Below are positions 7,858-44,745 of a DNA stretch of 64,000 bases, in pieces; positions within the stretch are counted from its first letter, which is position 1, and each line of letters starts with the position of its first letter. The translations under genes were made by a program, and so were the position numbers. The DNA lies in NCBI GenBank assembly GCA_010909165.1, contig VJWM01000118.1, positions 62,001 through 126,000 on the forward strand. Direction: 5' to 3'. The notes beneath the pieces were generated by a model. The model saw only the letters and a list, made by a program, of their open reading frames with translations, did no database searches and had not been told where the DNA came from. The stretch comes from Anthoceros angustus (Eukaryota; Plantae; Anthocerotophyta).

Positions 7858-8230
7858 TCAATCAGGGGTGACTTGTACCTCGTTCACCTGCGTTGCTGCT
7901 TTGTGGATGATCGCCGTAGAGAGGGCACGTTGAAGAGCAATTGAGACCCGCTGTAACGCCGTGAAGTAGGAAAGAGATAGCCCCGCACCGTGCCCGTGGG
8001 CATGATAAGCCTTGGTGCAAGACTTGAGAAATGTATCAAAGTCCTTAGCCAATGCCCCAAACGTTTCAAGGACGAGCGGAATGAATTGGTGACCTACTTG
8101 CATCCCACTATATTTCTTGACTTTGAGAGCTATCACTCCAGCAGCAACCCAACCTGGACAGTTAATGATCACCTGAGTAGTGATGGTGTCACGTATAGGG
8201 TCAATAACCACCACATCCTCCACCGAAACC
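7858..8230 (-). mobile_element. Fragment of a non-LTR retrotransposon: restriction-like endonuclease (RLE) domain, CRE/R2-group type
   Basis: AA...KVKKY...FIPLVLETFGAL...FL...QRVSIALQR is the characteristic C-terminal RLE signature of early-branching LINEs. Confidence 0.75.
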
Positions 8231-23491: not shown

Positions 23492-24558
23492 CTATTTCTT
23501 GAACGCAAGGGCTGCAACTGCAGCAACAAGGCCTGCAGCAGCAGCTGCAAATCCTACACCTTTAATTGCATCTGCGGGCATGTATAATGTCAGAATATGA
23601 AGGAGTCAGCTCCAGCCAAAGACGTCACGAATCGACACAGGCTATGGAATACCTGTGGCACTTTGGTGCTCCACAATCTTCTTCAGCAACCGAGCCTGCT
23701 CGAATTCCGGTGCTAACTGCAGTCTCAGCATTCAAGGTTATCGGTGCAATGTGACGGAACCATGCTAGGATCTCGATTCTACTTAGCTAGAATTCTCACC
23801 TGCAGGGCCTCGTCAACCAACTTGAGGGCTTGTGCGGAGTCACCCGCCCTGTACTGCCCGACCGCCAAGAGGTAAGGAATCTCCCTGCACCAAGAAGGTG
23901 GAAAGGAAGCTGCATTCCAGATGCGGTCCCAACGTAAGTTCCAGTTGATTCAAACAATGGAACCACTTTGAGAAACTTGATCAAAACATTAGATACTGAC
24001 ATTCCAGCAAGGCAATGCCCCGTTTCACATCATCACTTTGCTTTGAATGAACAAGAGCCCAAGCCAGTCTCATGATACTCTCATCCCTATCCTGAGCAAC
24101 AGTAGACCAATCTCCTCCTCCGGCTGGCTCCCGTTCACACTCTGATTCCCCGGCTGCCTCCCGTTCCAATTCCTGAGAGAAGCCATTCTAAGAATACTAA
24201 CGCCACATGACCAGTGCCCAGTTCACCGAATCCTAACCACTCCAGACAGACAGCACGACCTGCATGTCAAACCCTGTCTGCCATCTTGCACACAGTTATA
24301 TCACTCAAACAAGGTCCAAACCATCTGAGCAGATCCCACTCACACCGCTCAATAATCCAGCAGACATGCAAAAGATGCACCGGGAAACATCATCCCTCCT
24401 CCCAGATGAACCTTAATTCTTTCAACCACACAGATCACAGAAACATTGGAGTCACATACCTCGATAATGTACTCATCGGTCCAAGGCATAAAGTCGGTGG
24501 TGCCAAATATTTCACCCATCTTGTCCAGAAACGGTGGACAAGATTCGTGTCTCTCCAT
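23492..24558 (-). CDS. FIS1: FIS1 paralogue, diverged tandem copy (5 exons; an in-frame upstream ATG exists at 24579)
   Basis: Same exon structure as the first copy with an open frame: FLDKMGEIFGTTDFMPWTD, MRLAWALVHSKQSDDVKRGIALLE, REIPYLLAVGQYRAGD, and TM tail ...AALAFKK*. Confidence 0.85.
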
Positions 24559-24927
24559 TCCGCTTTCAGAATTTCCCATCGCCACGCCGCAGCAACTCAG
24601 AGAGAGCCTGGCCGATCCAGAGGTCGGTGAAGGCCCCGATCAGGATCAGGCTATGTTTCATGTATCTTGCACGCACTTCTTGTACAGGGTTTCTAAATTT
24701 TGCAAGCCTTCTTCCCCGCCAAGTGGACTGAGACTGGCGGGAAGGTGCCGGTGGCCGGTAAGTTCTCACCGGGTAGCACTTGAGGCCGGCTTACTGACCG
24801 CGGGTGAAACCGGATGAACCAGCTCGACGCTAAGTGATGTACCTGGAATCCGAACGCTGAGTCGTGGAAGTCGTGCCGGCCCTTGTGAGGGACGCAGTGT
24901 GCTCCGTGTGGCGCTCAGTCTGTAGCG

Positions 24928-25625
24928 ATGGTGGCTGCCAAAGCGGCGAACGCAGTGCCCGGGGCTTTCGGCAAAGTGCACCTGGTGTCTCCTGTTCTCA
25001 AGAAGTTTCTTGGTGTTGGAGAAATTTCTCGTGTGGACCTCACGAAGTCGGTATGGAGCTACATCAAGGACAACAAGCTGCAGGCAAGTCTCCCTGTCCC
25101 GTTTCTTTCCATTTAGGGCTTTTCTTATGTCGACCTTTGTCCGTGTGTAGTCTGGCCTCCACGCCCATTGAGTCTTGACGTTGTACCATAGCTGGAGTTA
25201 CCCTGTGCTGTTGTGTGCATTCGCGTCTCGTGTTTTCCGTAACCAGAAGTTTGAGCTGCAGCCCGTCTTGAGTCTAAGTTGTTTTCGCTGAATTTATGAT
25301 GCCGTAGTTTGTCCAATGTGTGAGCTGCCGTGCTTTAGCTGATGCTGATGCTGCTTTTGCAGGTAGGTTATGTCTGGAGTGTGTTCTCCTTGAACCGATT
25401 TAACATTGAAAAGTGGGGGCTGCGGATGCAAAGTGAAACGTAGGTCTTGGTGGTGGCAATGATTTGTTCTCACTTCTGCGCCTTGTCCAACAGAATCCTG
25501 AGAAGAAGAGGGAGATCGTGTGTGATGACAAGCTGAAGGCCATCTTTGGGAAAGAACGAGTTGATTTCTTAGAAGTTCAGAAGCTGCTCAACCCCCATAT
25601 CCTTGCCAAGAAGGAGAGCACTTGA
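24928..25625 (+). CDS. Small SWIB/MDM2-domain protein (2 exons: 24928-25083 and 25494-25625)
   Basis: VSPVLKKFLGVGEISRVDLTKSVWSYIKDNKLQ | NPEKKREIVCDDKLKAIFGKERVDFLEVQKLLNPH is a typical SWIB domain. The intron is GC-AG. Confidence 0.9.
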
Positions 25626-26038
25626 CTGCCGTGGTGACGTAGGCTTTTAGTCCGATGCGTTTTGGAGTTGCAGTGTGGACCTCTGTCAGCTCAAATGGGA
25701 ATGTGCGTACAGTGCTCTCTTCTTCTTCTCGTGGCAGTGTCACTCGTCGCTGTTCACGCCACCAGGCAGTCTCGAGACTCTTCCTATGGTAAACTGTAGT
25801 TGAGGACACTTCCTTGTGGTCATGCGTTTTGTCAACAGCATGAGTCTGAGATGTGATTATGGTTGGCGGGAGTGACTGCAAGTATTGCCCTTTTCCCCAC
25901 TGAGGCGGAGGCTGCTTGTCTTGTAACAACCTGATGTAAATTGAATTGAAGGAAGGTGTCGTACCACACTGAATTGTAAAACTGTCAAGGTGGAGATGCG
26001 CGTTCATGGCCGAATGGCACCCAAGGCTAATGAGTGGC

Positions 26039-27288
26039 TCAGACGCTCGTGAACAACCTTGCTTCTAAGACTGCAATCCTCTCTTCCAGCTCCTTGATAT
26101 GCATCCTATGCGCGGCAGCCTCTTCTCTTGCCTGTTGCAGTAGCAGCTCCATGTTTGGACAGGCATCAGGGTAGAAATCTCTGCGCAAGGAAAGCAGGGA
26201 GACATGAGTCCAAGGAAGACAGCGGTGGGGGAACAAACGGAAGTGTGAGAGGTGAATACGAACATTGTGCTGCCGGTATCAGGGCATGCCTGCAGCTTCT
26301 CTATGAAGCTTGTCAGGTACTGCTCTTTGTGGAAGAGAACATTGTAGATCACACAGCCATTGCGTGCCCAAAAGTAGTAGAACACAGCTCCAGCGACAAC
26401 CAGGGACAAGAAGCACCTGCCGCCAGGTTTCTTGTAGCCTTCCGTTTGGATCGTGACAAGTGATAGCAGAAACAGAAACAGAGACATCACCCCTCCGTTG
26501 CGGATCAGCCTGCACCACCACCAAGGAGCTGTTGAACACAGGTGCTGCGGAAGCATGATGCATGAGATGATGTTACTAACGTCACCTGAACTCGTTGTAG
26601 TGTGCCATGATGTTCCTCAGGGTGAACGCAAGGCCAAGGAAGACACAGAAGTAGAGCGGAAACAACACAAGAAGACCAATGGACCAATACCGTGTCTGTA
26701 TTTTGCAATCACCCTCCTGCTTCACGAATCTGGAGGCACCACCGGAATCCGATGAGCAACAAAGACGACAAAAAACCCATCCAGGTGCATCCGACCAACA
26801 TTCATCACAAGGCGTCCATTCTTGCTGTCCATCACTCACTCGCTTCCTTTGAAAACAGTGGCAACAGTGGAAAAGCCAATAACTGGAGCCAGCAACAACA
26901 CCAGGGGCAGAATAATGTGCTTGCATCTTCCGATTGTCTGCGCCTTCCTGATGAAGATGAGATGCAAATTGAAGAGCCGCACCGTCATACAGTTCAGCCA
27001 CAACGCAAACCCAAAACAGGCCTGCAGCCAGAAAGTCCACAGGGGACACACCCCGAATATGCTTCCCTTATCTCGCCCCAAGTGACCATTCACCACGATG
27101 GTTGCTCCCAGCCAGACCAGCCCACCCACAGAGCTCATCACAGTCAGGTCCACAGCTTTGGTCCTGATGGGCGAGTACTTCCGATTCACAACGATCACCA
27201 CATTCCCGAGAATGAAAGGTATGCAGCCTAGGGCCACAAACACTCCAGTCACGTAGTCCAGAGGATGTCGGCAGTTTCCAGGGCACAT
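26039..27288 (-). CDS. Seven-transmembrane protein homologous to the 7TM domain of plant RGS1 but lacking the RGS box (about 326 aa, 4 exons)
   Basis: Exons 27288-26840, 26729-26586, 26509-26264 and 26180-26039 are phase-consistent GT-AG; the last donor is least certain. Motifs parallel AtRGS1 recalled from memory: CRHPLDY~CPSDY, CPLWTFWLQACFGFALWL~CYLWAVWIEGPLGFGLLM, LHLIFIRK~LYFIFVKK, ILPLVLL~FLPLVLL, HYNEFR~RFDELR, PDTG~PDSG. Confidence 0.75.
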
Positions 27289-29183
27289 GGTGGCCTCCGG
27301 AGTTTCATTCCTGAACTCTCCTTTTTCCTACCTCTCTCCTTTTGCAGCAGCTGCTGTCTTCCCACAGGCCACACACCCTGCAAACATCATCTGAGCCCGC
27401 TCCAATTCTGAGCAGCTCGCATCGGGCAGGGCCAGAAGTTGAAGGAGGGAATTGGGAAGGGGTTGATCCCAAGTGCCAATGCCCATGAGCACCATGGGGG
27501 AGGCGACTTACTGGTGAAGATGGCGGCACACCACTGGGTTGACATGGCATTCTCCTGGAGCAATGCAATTGCCGTCACTCCGTAGTCGTAGAGTTTTGGT
27601 CGGACGCGATTTTTTTGGGAACTGCCATCGGTCTCGTCAACACTCGACATTGAATGGTTGAATGAATGAGCTGGGGAATTTGGTTTGGAATTGTGGTAGA
27701 CCGCACTCTACAATAATTTTTTATATATGCGATAAATCATGCTCACATTTATTCTTATTTTCCAATAAAGCGTTGGCATCTCACTGAACTTTCTCAAAAC
27801 AGTATAAAGTATATGCTTAACACGTCATGTCCGGTGTAGGGGGTAGTTATTTTGACACCCATTTGTTGAACGTACACTATTTAAATATTTAAATATTCAA
27901 CTTAGAGTTAAAATAATTATTAGACTTTTTAAAATAAACCTTCCTTTAAGCGTGACAAGCTCAAATGGCAGGCATAGAAGCTTGTAAGAAGGTATATTTC
28001 AATATCGTCATAATTCTAATCTTTATTTTAATTTACCTACTATGGGGGCGATTTTATTTCAGTAGAGTATAGCTCATGTGGCTAGGCATAAGAAGGTAAT
28101 TTTTAATACTGAAAACTCAAATTTTAATTTGGGTTTACTGTTGGAGGAGATTGAATTCCGGTTGAGTACATCGTTTTAAGACCGGGTTGTGTGTGGGTTG
28201 GGGGGCTACCAAGTTGCAGTCATTCTGACAAGCACCCCTTAATTTCAAGAGGTAGCAAAGTCACGTAGGACCTGTGAACTTCATGAACTCCTATCTACCT
28301 ACCGCGTCAAAAATTATTTTGATCCTATACCAACTTTAAATGTGTATGTTGAATACAAGATGCCTTCACCCCATAATTTTTAAGGATGCCTCCACCCCGT
28401 ACATACTTTTTGTCTTCACTTGAGGGGTGACACTATAGGCATCATAGAGTTTATAGAAACTCAAATGTTTTCAAAAATTTGGATATGTGCCAACTTTAAA
28501 AAGGTACATATATTGATCGAAGGATGTGTCCACCGAGAATTGAGTTGATTCATTTAGAATTCAAACTACTATGTATGTAACGTTAAACCTTAAACAAATA
28601 ATTTTTCCAATGAGTTCAAAATTCTTTGAACTTTTATTCTAAATTTCCACACTCTTTGTTGAAATATGCCTCGCATGTGTATAGTGTCCGAACAAATTCA
28701 AGACTTGCTGGGTAGTCTTTGAATTGGAAATACATTCAAGATTAATTCGTCAGTCTATTTCTTACAGTCTAATTTGAATTAGTGTATTGAACTTCACCAA
28801 CCATTGATGGAAAGTTGAAATTTTTTAAATTACAAAAAGATAAAGTAAACAGCCTCACTAGCTATGGCTAAGCAAATCTAAGATGGCCTACCGACCTTAT
28901 GCTCATAAGATGAGTCTCATAGGTTTAAACTAGGTATTTAATTAGGTATCTTCTTGAATATCTTTCAGGTTTGCAAATTAGGAGCTATAGAAATATTCTT
29001 AACAAGTATTCACATCCAAACAATCTTATAGTGGAACATAATGGTGCTGTCATTTCCACTGTTTGATCAGTAATTGGCATCCATCCCATTCGTTACCAGC
29101 TCCATGTTCGTTTGTTCGTTTTGGTGCTTTCTCCTTCCACAAAGGATTGTAAATTAGGAAAGCCCACCAATAAAGAATTTCCG

Positions 29184-39490: not shown

Positions 39491-40168
39491 TGTCATGCCG
39501 TGATACTAATCTCTGCACTTGGGTTTAGTGTTTGATTAGCATTAATTAATCTAATTACTTATCTTTAAGTAAGTAATTAGTGTTAATTAATCTAAGATGC
39601 TTATGTTAATTAAGCATTGATTAGTGATAATTAATCTAAGGTGCTTATGTTAATTAAGCATTGATTAGTGTTAAGTAAACATGGTTAGCAATAGCTAAGT
39701 GGATAAGCTCAAGTAATATGCTTGGCATATTCCTTGCATATTATAGTGTATTCTTAGAATACAATAGCTAAGTGGATAAGCTCAAGTAATATGCTTTGGC
39801 ATATTCCTTGCATATTATAGTGTATTCTTAGGATATTTACGGCATATGTCACGCCAATAGGATATCTTAGGAATAATGCCAGGCTATATATGACCCTTCC
39901 ATTGAGGACAAGCTCGGATCATAGCTTGTCCTCTAGATATGCAATGCAAGGGTGTTGTGAGGAGGCCAAAGCTATCACTCCGAGAGCGATGTGTGAGGAA
40001 TTTGCGTGTTGTTCTCGTGGGGAGAGTGTGTTTGTGCCACGACGTGCGAACTACTCCCTCCTGTTGTTATTGGTTGCACCTATATATCTAGATGCGTATT
40101 AGATTTGTTTGCTTGGTTGTTGATCGAGGAAGTGCTTATATGAATTCAAGTGCTTACCTCGTGCGACA
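39491..40168 (+). mobile_element. Solo LTR, about 680 bp
   Basis: TGTC...GACA ends flanked by a 4-bp direct repeat AGAA (39487-39490 and 40169-40172). Internal tandem repeats (about 42 bp and 73 bp), TATA-like CTATATATG near 39884, and an 11-bp-stem hairpin GAGGACAAGCT..AGCTTGTCCTC at about 39904-39932. Confidence 0.6.
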
Positions 40169-40386
40169 AGAACATCTATCTATTATTGGACAATATCCTT
40201 TAGACTATATGTATACTGCCTTTCCTGAGTTGCATTTAAAGCAACTTCAATAATAGAAAGATGATCACCGTCACTTCCTAGCAACGAACAATTAACATCT
40301 TCACTTTACTATTATGCAGCTCTTTGAGTAATAAGAAATTCTAATTATATTGCTAATTGCTGTACAAGAACTAAAGACCCATCAAT

Positions 40387-43374
40387 TTAATTACCAACAT
40401 CTGCTTTGAATAGCTTGAGTCGTTCTGAAGCGGCCTTTGATTTACCCTTCTTCTTCCTCTTCTTTGTATTCTTCTTGGACTTGGAATTCATAGACTGGGT
40501 CTTTTGTGATCGTTTCTTTGAACGATTTCGAACTTTCACCTTTTCTGCTACTGATTTCTTGTTTGAGTACCCTGCATCATCCGTATTTGTCTCAACAAAC
40601 AGGCAAGGGGGATTCAACATACTTTTGAATAATGATAGATACTTCGTTTGTGTAGTAACTATAGTGACACGCTCACATGCGCTTGATTGCAAGTGGTCAA
40701 GAAAGATAAACCATTCTCGTGTCACCTTGTTTACCATCCATAAAATATATTTCTTCATGAAATAGTCGGTTGCACTTGAACTCATTTCTTCTTTTTCCTG
40801 TTGTATGCAATCCACATCGATCGCAGCATCAAGTAGACACACATCTTTGATCCCAAAATGAATTAGTCTTTTAGACATTGTCATGAAAATTCCTTTCACT
40901 TCGTCCACCATATCTTTGTGTTGAGAGAGAAAATGCACGTTCGCACCACAAAGTCTTAATATCATCTCTCCATTCTCCATGAGAATTTCAAAATGACCAT
41001 CAATAATCCGGTGAACTCGCTTTAGTGGATACGAATATCTATTTGAAACCTGCACAACAAATACATCAAAAATTAATTTTCAAGCGACATGATATGACAA
41101 TGAAAGCTTCACATGTGGGAATTTAGCATGCTCAGAAAAATGGGACCACGTACATTGGGAGATGCTTATTTTACTAGCGAAGATAATATCTAATGTCAAA
41201 TACTATTATGAAATCCTAAATAAGTATTGCATGAGAATAACCCTAATTAGATAAGAGCATGAGAAAACCTTGGCAATAAATATGATCACGAATTTTGACC
41301 AATTTGAACTGTTAAAATATTATCATAATCATATAATAACTTCTAGTAACTATATAGAAAACTTAGGAGGGGAAAGGGAGAGACAAAGACTAGGGAATTC
41401 ATAAAACTATGACTTGCACAATTGTATGTCAACATGCGAGTTTCAAAGCAAAACCATTTGTATTGTAATGGTAATGGTAATTGGGTAATATGATAAGTCA
41501 ATGAAAAGATCTTACCTCGTTATGAATTTCACGTCGTTCATGAGCTTCTTGTGCAGAGCAACCTGATTTGAGAGAAGTTACTTCTTTTATTGTGGAAGAG
41601 TAATCGAATCAAGCAAGTTTTGGAATAATCTAACATATTCCTCCGCATAATGTGATATACATATACGCTCAAACCGAGAAGCCTTTAACTCTTCCTCGAA
41701 AAGAGAACCCATTCTTGCTTCACCTTCCAAACAAGTCTGCTCACATGCCTCTCCACAAGCTTGTTATTTTCACTTGCACTATCATTGTGTGCTTCAAATT
41801 CATTTCGAGCATTGTACGATGAAGGTCCGAGTTGTTTGCAATAAGGATATATCACGCATCCTAGACTTTACATATCGCTCTCCCATTTTATAAACATGTA
41901 CCTCATTTCTTTCAATATAACGTCATGTGTGTGTAAGACATGTGACTTCACAACATAATATTTCAAAGTCACAATCCTTCCTCGTTAATGTATCCAAAAT
42001 GTCCTCTATAAAGTCTTGTATTCGCATTTCCTTCTAATTGAAACTGCACAACAAATACATCAAAATTAATTTTCAAGCGACATGATATGACAATGAAAGC
42101 TTCACATGTGGGAATTTAGCATGCTCGGAAAAATGGGACCACGTACATTGGGAGATGCTTATTTTACTAGCGAAGATAATATCTAATGTCAAATACTATT
42201 ATGAAATCCTAAATAAGTATTGCATGAGAATAACCCTAATTAGATAAGAGCATGAGAAAACCTTGGCAATAAATATGATCACGAATTTTGACCAATTTGA
42301 ACTGTTAAAATATTATCATAATCATATAATAACTTCTAGTAACTATATAGAAAACTTAGGAGGGGAAAGGGAGAGACAAAGACTAGGGAATTCATAAAAC
42401 TATGACTTGCACAATTGTATGTCAACATGCGAGTTTCAAAGCGCAAAACCATTTGTATTGTAATGGTAATGGTAATTGGGTAATATGATAAGTCAATGAA
42501 AAGATCTTACCTCGTTATGAATTTCACGTCGTTCATGAGCTTCTTGTGCAGAGCAACCTGATTTGAGAGAAGTTACTTCTTTTATTGTGGAAGAGTAATC
42601 AGAATCAAGCAAGTTTTGGAATAATCTAACATATTCCTCCAGACAATGTGATATACATATACGTTCAAACTGAGAAGCCTTTAACTCTTCTGAAAAGAGA
42701 ACCCATTCTTGCTTCACCTTCCAAACAAGTCTGTTCACATGCCTCTCCACAAGCTTGTTATTTTCACTTGCACTATCATTGTGTGCTTCAAATTCATTTC
42801 TGAGCATTGTACGATGAAGGTCTGGAGTTGTTTGCAATAAGGATATATCACGCATCCTAGACTTTACATATCGCTCTCCCATTTTTATAAACATGTACCT
42901 CATTTCTTTCAATATAACGTCATGTGTGTGTAAGACATGTGACTTCACAACATAATATTTCAAAGCTGTCAATCCTTCCTCGTTAATGTATCCAAAATGT
43001 CCCTCTATAAAGTCTTGTATTCGCATTTCCTTCTAATTGCCACAATGAGAAAAAGACTCACAATGCTAGAAAACGAAGGATAATTTAAGAACAAAAATAT
43101 TTAGGCAACATCATATGGAAGCTCAAGAACATAGCAGAAATATTAATGCATTATCATATGGAAGCCTAACAACATAGCAGAAATATTCATGCATTATCAT
43201 ATAGAAGTTTAACAACATAGCAGAAATATTCATGCAATATTACATGGAAGCTTAACAACATAGCTAGAATATTCATGCAACATTACATGAAAGCTTAACA
43301 ACATAGTAGAAATATTCATGCAGTATCACATGAAAGCTTAACAACATAGAAAGGTATACCTCATAAGTTGTCAT
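40387..43374 (-). CDS. Unknown protein made of repeated homologous phase-0 exons of about 170 aa plus a Lys/Arg-rich tail
   Basis: Micro-exon MTTYE|GTATAC (43374-43360); exon about 43032-42511 (ends HNE|GTAAGA); a duplicated exon copy at about 42033-41516; terminal exon 41049-40387 (TGCAG|VSNRY). Exons 2 and 3 align: RIQDFIEGHF~RVHRIIDGHF, KVKQEWVLF~KVTREWFIF, FERICI~CERVTI, YVRLFQNLL~YLSLFKSML. Confidence 0.6.
41043..43039. repeat. Tandem duplication of about 1.0 kb covering one intron plus one exon
   Basis: Copies 41043-42037 and 42038-43039 are near-identical, with junction microhomology TTG. Confidence 0.95.
43110..43350. repeat. 43-bp minisatellite, 5-6 copies, in intron 1 of the unknown gene
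   Basis: Unit approximately atatggaagcttaacaacatagcagaaatattcatgcattatc. Confidence 0.9.
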
Positions 43375-43920
43375 TTTTTCTTCACACATGCCTCAATCCT
43401 ATTGCCAGTCACACACATATATAGCTTAGATATGAGTCTAGAATCGATGTTATCATTAAGATTTTCAAAATCTATCCTTAATTTGGACATTTTTTCAATT
43501 TGGATCTGTTATCCTTAAGATTTATAGAATCTATCCTTAACTTGGATATTTTATCAATCTGGATCTTTTATGTACTGTCATAAAACTTGTGTTGTGCACG
43601 ATTGCCACGCCCTAAAAGAAACTCTTTTTTTCTATTAATATCTTTAAAAATACAGCTTTGATATATTGTAATGCTTCGGCACAACGCTACCCACCAACTT
43701 CCCCCGTGAGGCGTTGTTAGAGAGACTTGTTCAAAAAATCAAAGGGAGAATGAGTTCCCTTTATGAAGAATTAAAGGCTTTTCAGTTTGAATGTTTATGG
43801 ATGTCACATTGTCTCTAGCTATATATTGGAATATTTCCAAACAAAGTTCCCTAGTAGCAAGAAGTTCACGTTTGATCAATATGTCACACCCAGAACTGAG
43901 GACGATGATGCAGCAGACGG

Positions 43921-44745
43921 TTAAGAGAATACTAGTTAGGATCGAGGTTTTGTCATGAACCAGTGCCCTTGGATTGTGCTCTTGTCCCCAGCGCCTTGGC
44001 ATTGCGGATAAGTCCTTACACGCATCTTGAGGGACGGCGCTTTAAGCACACTCGTATTTTTGATGTATGCTTGGAAATTGTAGATGGATACCTTTGATTG
44101 GATGACAAAGAGCTCACGCAAAGGCAAAGGCTCGCGCAGCAAAGGCTGTTGAAGAATCCAAAGGCGGAAGCCCTCTCAACTACCGCATGTGTATGAAAAA
44201 AGGAGAATCTAAGAGGATATCGCATGCAGAATAAACATGGAATAAGAAGGCACATGGTAGACATACCAGACTTCAAACTTTTGGCTGCTTACCCTTGCAC
44301 AGAACAAGATGTCAAATCTTTGCTTGAGGGCACACTTATATTGGACATCATCGAATGTGGAATCTCCAACCAAGGGTTTGAGCGCATCATCGCAAACCTA
44401 TAGCGAGAGATGCAAATGTAGATTCAACATGAAGTCAAGAAGGTAGTTGAGCAAGAAGTTGAGAAATTGTAGCATGAAAGAAACTTATGCAATCCTTTTA
44501 CGAATATCTGGAAACAAAAATACAAAAGGAGAAGAAGAATGTGATGCAAGACATGTAGAGAATAAGGAGACGCATTACAACACTCAAAGTTTTGCTGGGG
44601 GAAGATGGTGCTGTAAAAGATATATGAACCAAGCTTGTTCAAGGCCGAGTTCAATGGAGTATGTGTCGCGTATAAGAGAAAGTTAGGGGAACTCATTTTT
44701 CACGAGGTGCTGTGGGAGGCAATAGGTCCAGAGGATGGTACTAGT
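43921..44745 (+). pseudogene. Decayed unknown coiled-coil ORF, divergent from the repeated-exon gene
   Basis: A protein-like frame from 43921 (…DDKELTQRQRLAQQRLLKNPKAEALS…FERIIANL*REMQM*IQHEVKKVVEQEVEKL*) is interrupted almost only by TAG/TGA stops explicable as CAG/CGA C-to-T changes, plus a frameshift near 44485. Confidence 0.5.

What the first reader, a model, noticed from the sequence alone, without database searches (positions are those of the whole stretch)
26039..27288. RGS1-like 7TM protein with no RGS box, ending in a short coiled coil
Seen: a 4-exon gene of about 326 aa with seven hydrophobic segments, ending ...PDTGSTIDFYPDACPNMELLLQQAREEAAAHRMHIKELEERIAVLEARLFTSV*. The convergent SWIB gene stops about 400 bp away, leaving no obvious room for an RGS exon. 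Known: plant RGS1 is a 7TM domain fused to a C-terminal RGS box that acts as the GAP for G-alpha, and RGS1 is reported missing from the model moss and liverwort. Similarity to AtRGS1 (recalled from memory) runs through all TM helices and fades where the RGS box should start (PDSG..DPNEPLDKLL versus PDTG..CPNMELLL). Inference: this may be a stand-alone 7TM receptor module that signals through a coiled coil, or through a separately encoded RGS or other partner, which would be an undescribed variant of plant G-protein signalling.
Basis: partly seen in the sequence, partly recalled or inferred. Interest (0 to 1): 0.8.

Follow-up and report, generated by a model that had tools for sequence, protein, structure and literature searches.

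The report
RGS-less GABA-B-like seven-helix receptor gene
An expressed four-exon gene in a non-seed land plant (probably a hornwort) encodes a seven-helix membrane protein that is related to the membrane half of the plant G-protein regulator RGS1 and to animal GABA-B-type receptors, has no RGS box and ends in a short coiled coil; it belongs to an old, conserved and apparently unstudied family found from streptophyte algae to conifers.

Summary
The minus-strand gene (27288-26039) has four exons, GT-AG introns and 326 codons. RNA-type contigs of the same organism use all three predicted junctions. They run unspliced through the stop codon, and the 64-kb window holds no RGS-box coding.

The protein is homologous to the 7TM domain of RGS1, but only distantly (about 23% identity to angiosperm RGS1). 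It is not an RGS1 that lost its box. It belongs to a separate clade of RGS-less proteins, each a 7TM domain followed by a C-terminal coiled coil. Named members come from Klebsormidium, liverworts, lycophytes, ferns and conifers; Klebsormidium also carries a 7TM-RGS, and Selaginella and conifers are reported to. An AU test rejects grouping this clade with embryophyte RGS1 (p = 0.0004).

By profile and by predicted fold the domain is class-C GPCR type, closest to GABA-B receptor subunits. It has no ectodomain.

The most likely mechanism is inferred, not shown: a dimeric GABA-B/GPR156-like receptor or scaffold held by the cytoplasmic coiled coil. Any link to G proteins is untested.

I found no paper on the family; databases call its members hypothetical. 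The scan noted a second such gene elsewhere in this genome (s1-707038), which I did not examine.

The parts
27289..27619 (-). 5' UTR (minimum extent)
   Evidence: RNA-type contig X1 record 3 lies contiguously on 27269-27619 with no mismatches. No coverage was seen beyond 27619. An in-frame TGA lies 21 nt upstream of the ATG.
26840..27288 (-). Exon 1 CDS (aa 1-149 plus 2 nt): short N-terminus and TM1-TM4, including the conserved TM3 Cys81
   Evidence: phmmer with this exon gives 110 hits, the best at E 4e-41. It has a sub-threshold Pfam 7tm_3 hit (18.2 bits). The donor GTGAGT and the 26840|26729 junction are used in RNA contig X1.
26586..26729 (-). Exon 2 (144 nt): ECL2 with conserved Cys158, and TM5
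   Evidence: The matching exon of the Marchantia orthologue is also 144 nt.
26264..26509 (-). Exon 3 (246 nt): TM6, the conserved G228-R229 motif, TM7 and the proximal cytoplasmic tail
   Evidence: The matching Marchantia exon is 249 nt.
26039..26180 (-). Exon 4 CDS (aa 280-326 plus TGA at 26041-26039)
   Evidence: The 26264|26180 junction is used by X1, X2 and X20. Transcribed sequence continues unspliced past the stop.
26051..26155 (-). Segment coding the predicted cytoplasmic coiled-coil helix (about aa 289-323)
   Evidence: Heptad scan: residues 289-316, a/d core occupancy 0.62, reached by 3 of 200 shuffles. The aligned part of the Psilotum homologue is a 48-residue helix at block-mean pLDDT 88-98. 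The tail aligns across the family.
25626..26038 (-). 3' UTR region, transcribed and shared with the convergent SWIB gene's 3' end (poly(A) site not determined)
   Evidence: X1 contig record 2 runs contiguously over 25491-26180 and joins the SWIB exons (24838-25080, 25491-25625) to the 7TM gene. Contigs cannot show strand or transcript ends. In a related organism (X2) this stretch carries many indels, whereas the CDS carries none.

Best explanation
This is an intact, expressed gene for a class-C-type (GABA-B-like) seven-transmembrane protein. It has no extracellular ligand-binding domain and no RGS box. A cytoplasmic tail after TM7 ends in a short coiled-coil helix.

It is a member of 'subclade A' of an old streptophyte family, which is the orthogroup of Marchantia Mp1g05640. 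This family is a paralogue of the 7TM domain of plant RGS1, not a truncated RGS1.

Most likely mechanism (inferred, not shown): it sits in a membrane with the N-terminus outside and the C-terminus in the cytoplasm. It dimerises through the C-terminal coiled coil, as GABA-B1/B2 subunits do, either with itself or with the subclade-B paralogue. It then acts as a receptor or scaffold through the cytoplasmic face of the 7TM bundle, like the ectodomain-less class-C orphans GPR156 and GPR158. The obvious candidate clients are heterotrimeric G-protein subunits (G-alpha/XLG), but nothing here tests that.
For: Shown:
- Gene model and splicing.
- No RGS box in the transcript or the window.
- The model aligns end to end with the family 7TM profile (residues 10-272, 325 bits).
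- It is 55.7% identical over 323 aa to Psilotum P0117, 48% to Marchantia P0002 and 39.5% to Klebsormidium P0245; all three alignments reach model residue 318-322, so they include the tail.
- All 22 positions invariant in the RGS-less clade are kept, and 16 positions are shared with at least 20 of 22 aligned rows, which include 7TM-RGS proteins. Among these are Cys81 and Cys158, the TM3-ECL2 pair typical of GPCRs.
- The first three intron positions match those of the Marchantia orthologue.
- In relatives, indels occur only in the UTRs and one intron.
- The careful tree gives an RGS-less clade (96/89) separate from the streptophyte 7TM-RGS clade (100/100), and the order within subclade A follows the species tree.
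- Class-C assignment: orthologues pass the Pfam 7tm_3 threshold (P0117 41.7 bits, P0245 46.5 bits, P0011 53.6 bits). The family profile hits GABA-B2 at E 1.9e-14, with mGluR4, GABA-B1, GPR158 and CaSR below it.
- The AlphaFold model of the Psilotum homologue (pLDDT 87.6, pTM 0.79) has 7 TM helices, an ECL2 hairpin and a 48-residue C-terminal helix. Its best Foldseek matches are GABA-B, CaSR, GPR156 and mGlu receptors.
- A heptad signal is present in the tails of the family.

From established knowledge: GABA-B subunits pair through C-terminal coiled coils. [quoted passage not shown]
Against: - Dimerisation, membrane location, ligand and any G-protein coupling are all untested.
- The window protein's heptad signal is weak and its helix is short (about 35 aa).
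- The structure was predicted for a homologue that is 56-62% identical, not for the window protein itself.
- The tail is poorly conserved in sequence (14 of 49 positions identical to Psilotum).
- Some family members score no better than shuffles in my crude heptad scan (P0119, P0013, P0017, P0018).
- Class-C receptors without an ectodomain are rare, and their modes of action differ from one to another.
Confidence: 0.55

Rival explanations
1. Trans-acting RGS platform. Like animal GPR158/GPR179, the 7TM protein uses its cytoplasmic coiled coil to recruit a separately encoded RGS or another GAP (or another soluble partner) to the membrane. This would split the RGS1 function over two genes.
For: The 7TM domain is homologous to RGS1 and to protist and charophyte 7TM-RGS proteins. 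A coiled coil takes the place of the RGS box. In GPR158 the coiled coil and intracellular loops bind RGS7-G-beta-5 (PMC8611064), and the family profile also hits GPR158 (E 4e-7).
Against: No soluble RGS protein is known in these plants, and papers report bryophytes as lacking RGS genes (PMC3386157, PMC11061236). No RGS box lies in this window, and the rest of the genome could not be searched. The family coexists with a complete 7TM-RGS in Klebsormidium and with the RGS1 reported for Selaginella and conifers (PMC3386157), so it is not simply a split RGS1.
Confidence: 0.12
2. A role unrelated to G proteins. The family is a class-C-fold membrane protein used as a scaffold, a trafficking factor or a sensor that signals through other partners. 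The RGS1 and GPCR homology would then reflect only common descent of the fold.
For: Many relatives in protists lack an RGS box. Most bryophytes are reported to lack a canonical G-alpha (PMC11061236). No G-protein element is linked to the gene here or at the Marchantia locus, where the neighbours are FAN1 and a zf-CCCH gene.
Against: The closest solved homologues are all G-protein-coupled class-C receptors. The nearest non-streptophyte relatives include several 7TM-RGS fusions, which ties this 7TM type to G-alpha regulation in several eukaryotic lineages.
Confidence: 0.28
3. A mis-modelled or decaying RGS1. The real gene would carry an RGS exon missed by the model, or this would be a truncated pseudogene left after loss of the RGS box.
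For: There is sequence similarity to RGS1. NCBI even names the Cryptomeria family member 'regulator of G-protein signaling 1 isoform X4'.
Against: RNA contigs show the stop codon inside a contiguous terminal exon and no further junction. There is no RGS-like ORF anywhere in 64 kb. The same architecture, length and intron positions are conserved from Klebsormidium to ferns. Every family-invariant residue is kept. The phylogeny and the AU test place it outside the RGS1 clade.
Confidence: 0.03

Closest known systems
Plant RGS1 (AtRGS1-type 7TM-RGS) and charophyte 7TM-RGS (Chara braunii AHB52760.1, Klebsormidium KFL_000430070)
   Same: The seven-helix domain is homologous along its whole length. 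It shares the N-terminal C-x-x-DY motif, the TM3 and ECL2 cysteines, the WxxW and G motifs in TM3 and the arginine before TM7.
   Different: There is no RGS box, and a coiled coil stands in its place. Identity to angiosperm RGS1 is only about 23% and to charophyte 7TM-RGS about 24-29%. It forms a separate clade, and the AU test rejects union with embryophyte RGS1.
GABA-B receptor subunits GB1/GB2 (class C GPCR; e.g. PDB 7eb2, 6uo8)
   Same: These are the best profile match (E 1.9e-14) and the best fold match (TM-score by query 0.57) for the 7TM domain. In both, a coiled-coil segment follows TM7; for GABA-B this rests on established knowledge.
   Different: There is no Venus-flytrap ectodomain, only about 10 N-terminal residues before TM1. 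Sequence identity is about 15%. Dimerisation and G-protein coupling are not shown for the plant protein.
GPR156 and GPR158/GPR179 (class-C orphans without a Venus flytrap)
   Same: The class-C 7TM domain works without a flytrap domain. GPR156 is among the top fold matches (8yk0, 8iei). GPR158 has a cytoplasmic coiled coil that docks an RGS protein (PMC8611064).
   Different: They are animal proteins with long tails or other ectodomains, and no orthology is implied. Partner binding is unknown for the plant family.
Unnamed streptophyte orthogroup: Marchantia polymorpha Mp1g05640 / MARPO_0005s0043, Selaginella LOC9657419, Diphasiastrum O6H91_06G051200, Ceratopteris KP509_19G053100, Psilotum EP00249_P014398, Klebsormidium KFL_001160190
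   Same: They share the architecture, a similar length (331-427 aa), 40-56% identity over nearly the whole length, conserved intron positions and a coiled-coil tail.
   Different: The window protein has the shortest tail of the set. All members are annotated as hypothetical or uncharacterised, or by automatic rule as 'GPCR family 2/3 profile domain-containing'. I found no paper that names them.

Membership tests
Plant RGS1 / 7TM-RGS | N-terminal 7TM domain homologous to that of AtRGS1 | tested here: met
   Local blastp of the spliced model against angiosperm RGS1 gives E 1.6e-11 and 22.6% identity over residues 4-246. The family profile scores RGS1 proteins at 92-106 bits end to end.
Plant RGS1 / 7TM-RGS | C-terminal RGS box (Pfam PF00615) | tested here: not met
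   Exon-wise Pfam scans find none. RGS profiles find nothing in the six frames of the window (best E 4.1). The transcript ends without a further exon. The close homologues scanned against Pfam also lack it.
Plant RGS1 / 7TM-RGS | Placement inside the streptophyte 7TM-RGS clade | tested here: not met
   The careful tree separates the 7TM-RGS clade (100/100) from the RGS-less clade (96/89). The AU test gives p = 0.0004 against RGS-less plus embryophyte RGS1 as one clade. Caveat: I named this group after seeing a quick tree.
Plant RGS1 / 7TM-RGS | GAP activity on G-alpha | not testable with these tools
   This needs biochemistry. No catalytic domain is present.
Class C GPCR 7TM (Pfam 7tm_3, PF00003) | 7TM domain matching the family model above threshold | tested here: inconclusive
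   Exon 1 alone scores 18.2 bits against a cut-off of 33.5, and the joined protein was not scanned. Orthologues pass: P0117 41.7 bits, P0245 46.5, P0011 53.6, P0120 43.9. The family profile hits GABA-B2 at E 1.9e-14.
Class C GPCR 7TM (Pfam 7tm_3, PF00003) | Class-C fold with the TM3-ECL2 cysteine pair and an ECL2 hairpin | tested here: met
   Cys81 and Cys158 are invariant. The AlphaFold model of the homologue shows an ECL2 hairpin, and its top Foldseek matches are all class-C receptors.
Class C GPCR 7TM (Pfam 7tm_3, PF00003) | Extracellular Venus-flytrap / ANF ligand-binding domain (typical of the class, but absent in GPR156 and GPR158) | tested here: not met
   Only about 10 residues precede TM1.
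Class C GPCR 7TM (Pfam 7tm_3, PF00003) | Activation of heterotrimeric G proteins | not testable with these tools
GABA-B-type C-terminal coiled-coil dimer | Heptad-repeat helix after TM7 | tested here: met
   Residues 289-316 give a heptad score reached by 3 of 200 shuffles, and 11 of the 16 family homologues scored reach 0 of 200. The homologue has a long, confident helix. My heptad score is home-made and not a calibrated predictor.
GABA-B-type C-terminal coiled-coil dimer | Actual homo- or heterodimerisation through that helix | not testable with these tools
   Only monomer prediction was available.
Streptophyte RGS-less 7TM plus coiled-coil family (Mp1g05640 orthogroup, subclade A) | Placement in the clade, full-length collinearity and shared intron positions | tested here: met
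   Clade support is 96/87 for subclade A and 98/92 for the window protein with the vascular-plant members. Alignments run over 312-357 aa. Exon 2 is 144 nt in both genes, and exon 3 is 246 against 249 nt.

The most novel reading that the evidence does not exclude
Non-flowering streptophytes keep two paralogous, ectodomain-less class-C-type 7TM proteins (subclades A and B), each with a cytoplasmic coiled coil. In this reading they pair like GABA-B1/B2. The pair would be the missing membrane regulator of G-alpha/XLG in plants that have no RGS1, such as bryophytes. It would act either as a true GPCR-type exchange factor or as a dock for a GAP in trans, as GPR158 is. That would be a second 7TM-based mode of plant G-protein control, beside RGS1.
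Probability: 0.1. Interest if true: 0.85.

Novelty: new variant of a known kind. Interest (0 to 1): 0.5.

Why it matters
Plant G-protein research holds that plants have no proven GPCRs and that RGS1 is the only 7TM regulator. It also holds that bryophytes and cereals simply lost RGS1, which leaves open how their G proteins are controlled.

This gene shows that a sister 7TM lineage survives in algae, liverworts, this probable hornwort, lycophytes, ferns and conifers. That lineage has a class-C GPCR fold and carries a coiled coil where RGS1 carries its box. I saw no flowering-plant or moss member, which may be why it has escaped attention.

The family is small (one or two genes per genome) and present in Marchantia, so its role can be tested directly by knock-out and by interaction assays with MpGPA1 and MpXLG.

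If the family has nothing to do with G proteins, it is still the clearest class-C-type receptor family in land plants.

Tried and rejected
- The word-index search with exon 1 returned one fragment only. Its length window excludes full-length relatives, so I used the exhaustive representative search instead.
- The word-index search with the family alignment was capped at 8000 candidates and gave 12 hits. It was useful for names but cannot serve as a census.
- The search with the RGS1 7TM region listed only eudicot RGS1 among the best 120. It said nothing about RGS1 in bryophytes.
- Exact look-ups of two long window ORFs and of the Cryptomeria isoform found nothing.
- Paper searches for the Marchantia gene ids, for RGS-less 7TM proteins and for class-C/PF00003 proteins in streptophytes found no description of the family.
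- dN/dS could not be computed, because the relatives' contigs are shown only as partial difference tables.
- Readings rejected: a truncated pseudogene, a missed RGS exon, and a recent loss of the RGS box in bryophytes.
- Left out by rule: the joined (spliced) protein was not sent to Pfam, the large protein searches, the PDB search or structure prediction. Those were run exon by exon by reference, or on stored full-length homologues.
- The spliced ORF was assembled from the window file only inside local scripts, for hydropathy, local blastp/hmmsearch, alignment and trees.
Full report
**1. The observation**

On the minus strand, an ATG at 27288 opens an ORF in a GCCACC-ATG context, with an in-frame TGA 21 nt upstream. 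This ORF can be joined through three GT-AG introns, all in phase 2. The CDS is 981 nt, which gives 326 aa plus TGA at 26041-26039. The exons are:

| Exon | Coordinates |
|---|---|
| 1 | 27288-26840 |
| 2 | 26729-26586 |
| 3 | 26509-26264 |
| 4 | 26180-26039 |

Hydropathy shows five strong hydrophobic segments. Two weaker helices (TM3 and TM7) are placed by alignment to a homologue whose AlphaFold model has seven TM helices.

**2. Transcript evidence**

I laid the contigs of four public runs on 24000-28500, which is 4501 letters and so under the operators' limit.

- Run X1 is identical to the window. One 1727-nt contig skips exactly the three predicted introns: 26180|26264, 26508/9|26585/6 and 26729|26840.
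- That contig lies contiguously on 25491-26180. It runs through the stop codon into a 3' region that overlaps the 3' end of the convergent SWIB gene.
- No joint leaves exon 3 or exon 4 for any other exon.
- A second X1 contig covers 27269-27619 and marks the 5' UTR.
- Three related organisms, 90-95% identical, use the same junctions where they are covered.
- In those relatives, indels occur in the UTRs and in intron 3 but not in the coding exons. The two apparent gaps at the exon 1/2 junction are replacements of equal length.
- Caveat: contigs show presence, not absence, of isoforms. They cannot show strand or transcript ends.

Profiles of the RGS box, built from RGS domains among the hits, find nothing in the six-frame translation of the whole 64-kb window (best E 4.1).

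**3. What was and was not searched**

Pfam, the word-index search and the exhaustive search were run on exon translations by reference. Structure prediction and the PDB searches were run on stored full-length homologues or on alignments of them. The spliced ORF was assembled from the window file only inside local scripts. There it was used for hydropathy, blastp and hmmsearch against proteins already fetched, alignment and trees.

**4. Relatives**

Exon 1 (149 aa, TM1-TM4) gives only a sub-threshold Pfam 7tm_3 hit. Against 1.84 billion representatives it finds 110 proteins.

The best hits are 48-54% identical to exon 1. The full-length ones are 316-396 aa long, and they carry no RGS domain. 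Where they are named, they are:

- Marchantia polymorpha Mp1g05640 / MARPO_0005s0043
- Diphasiastrum complanatum
- Selaginella moellendorffii LOC9657419
- a Cryptomeria protein that NCBI labels 'regulator of G-protein signaling 1 isoform X4'
- Psilotum nudum, the closest at 62% over the 7TM domain
- Riccia, Ceratopteris, Adiantum, Pteridium and Picea
- Klebsormidium nitens KFL_001160190

All are annotated as hypothetical or uncharacterised, or by automatic rule as GPCR-profile proteins.

Hits at 30-36% identity do carry PF00615. They are Klebsormidium KFL_000430070, the Chara braunii RGS and several protist 7TM-RGS proteins.

Angiosperm RGS1 is more distant still. It is reached by the family profile. 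It aligns end to end with a 7TM profile at about 100 bits, and with the spliced model at 22-24% identity over residues 4-246.

**5. Phylogeny**

A careful IQ-TREE analysis of 36 7TM domains agrees with a quick tree of 71. It gives two separate groups.

- The streptophyte 7TM-RGS clade (100/100) holds Chara, Klebsormidium and angiosperm RGS1.
- The RGS-less clade (96/89) is made of two subclades.
  - Subclade A branches in this order: Klebsormidium KFL_001160190, an unnamed transcriptome protein, the liverworts, then the window protein, which is sister (98/92) to ferns plus lycophytes.
  - Subclade B (100/100) holds Riccia, Diphasiastrum, Psilotum and Selaginella.

The order within subclade A follows the species tree. 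This supports orthology and vertical descent. It also places the source organism outside both liverworts and vascular plants. Other agents' notes on this genome call it 'probably a hornwort'. That fits, but I did not verify it.

An AU test rejects a tree in which the RGS-less proteins and embryophyte RGS1 form one clade to the exclusion of the charophyte 7TM-RGS proteins (delta lnL 42.8, p = 0.0004). The caveat is that I chose this grouping after seeing the quick tree.

Three further points bear on history.

- Klebsormidium carries both kinds of gene.
- Selaginella and conifers, which have family members here, are reported to have RGS1 (PMC3386157).
- The split therefore predates land plants, and this gene is not what remains of RGS1 in bryophytes.

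Whether the family's ancestor once carried an RGS box cannot be decided, because the tree is unrooted and deep nodes are weak. That remains possible, since several protist neighbours in the tree carry one.

**6. Conservation of the gene**

- The spliced model is 55.7% identical to the Psilotum protein over 323 aa, 48% to Marchantia and 39.5% to the Klebsormidium member. All three alignments reach model residue 318-322, so they include the tail.
- It keeps all 22 positions that are invariant among 16 RGS-less proteins.
- It shares 16 positions with at least 20 of 22 aligned rows, which include 7TM-RGS proteins. Apart from the start Met these are D11, W59, C81, W84, W87, G93, W97, C100, P135, C158, Y176, R188, E196, R229 and F244.
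- The Marchantia orthologue has introns at the same three places. Exon 2 is 144 nt in both genes, and exon 3 is 249 against 246 nt. Marchantia has one extra intron in the tail.

Together with the expression data, this rules out a pseudogene.

**7. What kind of 7TM domain this is**

- Several orthologues pass the Pfam 7tm_3 threshold.
- A profile of 72 family sequences hits GABA-B receptor subunit 2 at E 1.9e-14. mGluR4, GABA-B1, mGluR7/8, GPR158 and CaSR follow.
- AlphaFold2 on the Psilotum homologue, with that alignment, gives a confident model (mean pLDDT 87.6, pTM 0.79). It has seven TM helices, a beta-hairpin in ECL2, a short helix after TM7 and a 48-residue terminal helix with block-mean pLDDT 88-98.
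- The best Foldseek matches to solved structures are all class-C receptors: GABA-B, CaSR, GPR156, mGlu and TAS1R. TM-scores by query are 0.5-0.58.
- The invariant Cys81 and Cys158 correspond to the TM3-ECL2 disulfide of GPCRs.
- Only about 10 residues precede TM1, so there is no ectodomain.

**8. The tail**

The terminal helix is poorly conserved in sequence (14 of 49 positions identical to Psilotum), but it is heptad-patterned across the family. In a simple a/d-core scan, 11 of the 16 family homologues scored beat all 200 shuffles. The window protein scores 0.44 on residues 289-316, reached by 3 of 200 shuffles. RGS1 and the Klebsormidium 7TM-RGS show no such signal. This scan is home-made and uncalibrated. 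The window protein has the shortest tail of the set.

**9. Mechanism**

Shown: this is an expressed, selected, ectodomain-less class-C-type 7TM protein with a cytoplasmic heptad helix.

Inferred:
- Topology is N-terminus out and C-terminus in, by homology with class-C receptors.
- The protein dimerises through the coiled coil, as GABA-B1/B2 do. The partner could be another copy of itself or the subclade-B paralogue. Named species with both subclades are Diphasiastrum, Psilotum and Selaginella. Both also occur in the genus Riccia, in different species. This genome may have both as well (note s1-707038, not examined).
- It signals or scaffolds through the cytoplasmic face of the bundle, as the flytrap-less orphans GPR156 and GPR158 do.

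A GPR158-like variant, in which the coiled coil docks an RGS or another GAP in trans (PMC8611064), is attractive because this 7TM type is fused to RGS boxes in many eukaryotes. However, papers report no RGS genes in bryophytes (PMC3386157, PMC11061236), and I could not search this genome. A role unrelated to G proteins cannot be excluded.

**10. Novelty and literature**

Reviews and primary papers state that 7TM-RGS genes arose in streptophyte algae and were lost in bryophytes and many monocots (PMC3718340, PMC3386157, PMC12017998, PMC11061236). None that I read mentions an RGS-less paralogue with a coiled coil. Searches for the Marchantia gene ids and for related phrases found nothing. The held library lacks most subscription papers, so this is not proof of absence.

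The proteins themselves are in public databases as hypothetical proteins. I saw no angiosperm or moss member among the named hits.

I class the finding as a new variant of a known kind (class-C-type or RGS1-type 7TM proteins). It is of moderate interest: the family is real, old and testable in Marchantia, but its function, and any tie to G-protein signalling, rest on homology alone.

Noticed in passing
window 24838-26180: The convergent SWIB/MDM2-domain gene (last exons 24838-25080 and 25491-25625, Pfam SWIB E 1e-8 and 1e-13) and the 7TM gene are joined in one RNA-type contig. Their 3' ends therefore overlap or abut within the 413-bp gap, which could yield natural antisense overlap. Strand and transcript ends cannot be read from contigs.
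   Followed up: partly
window 27650-29000: An AT-rich, ORF-poor stretch lies directly upstream of the gene's 5' UTR. No RNA contig from any of the four runs covers it. It may be promoter or intergenic DNA, or a decayed repeat.
   Followed up: no
P0244 (Selaginella XP_024519061.1, 640 aa): This protein looks like two subclade-B 7TM units in tandem. The first is a partial copy (TM1-TM4) followed by low-complexity sequence, and the second is complete. It is either a fused annotation of tandem duplicates or a real tandem fusion.
   Followed up: no
P0021 (Adiantum nelumboides MCO5561322.1, 659 aa): This subclade-B-like protein has about 300 unrelated residues inserted between TM4 and TM5. The likely causes are a mis-called intron or an insertion in the gene model.
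   Followed up: no
P0008 (Cryptomeria japonica XP_057866111.1, 316 aa): NCBI names it 'regulator of G-protein signaling 1 isoform X4', but it has no RGS domain. It skips TM6-TM7 and goes straight to the coiled coil. It belongs to the RGS-less family, so the name is a transfer by similarity.
   Followed up: partly
P0022 (Logan contig, 747 aa): This protein from an unidentified eukaryote carries the same 7TM type, then an RGS box, then leucine-rich repeats, which is an unusual three-part architecture. P0030 (Chara, 1097 aa) carries a long N-terminal extension before its 7TM domain.
   Followed up: no
window 40001-44000: GC falls to 0.34-0.36 here, against about 0.5 elsewhere in the window. Another first-reader note (s1-670489) places a 'mobile island' with a duplicating exon at this spot.
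   Followed up: no
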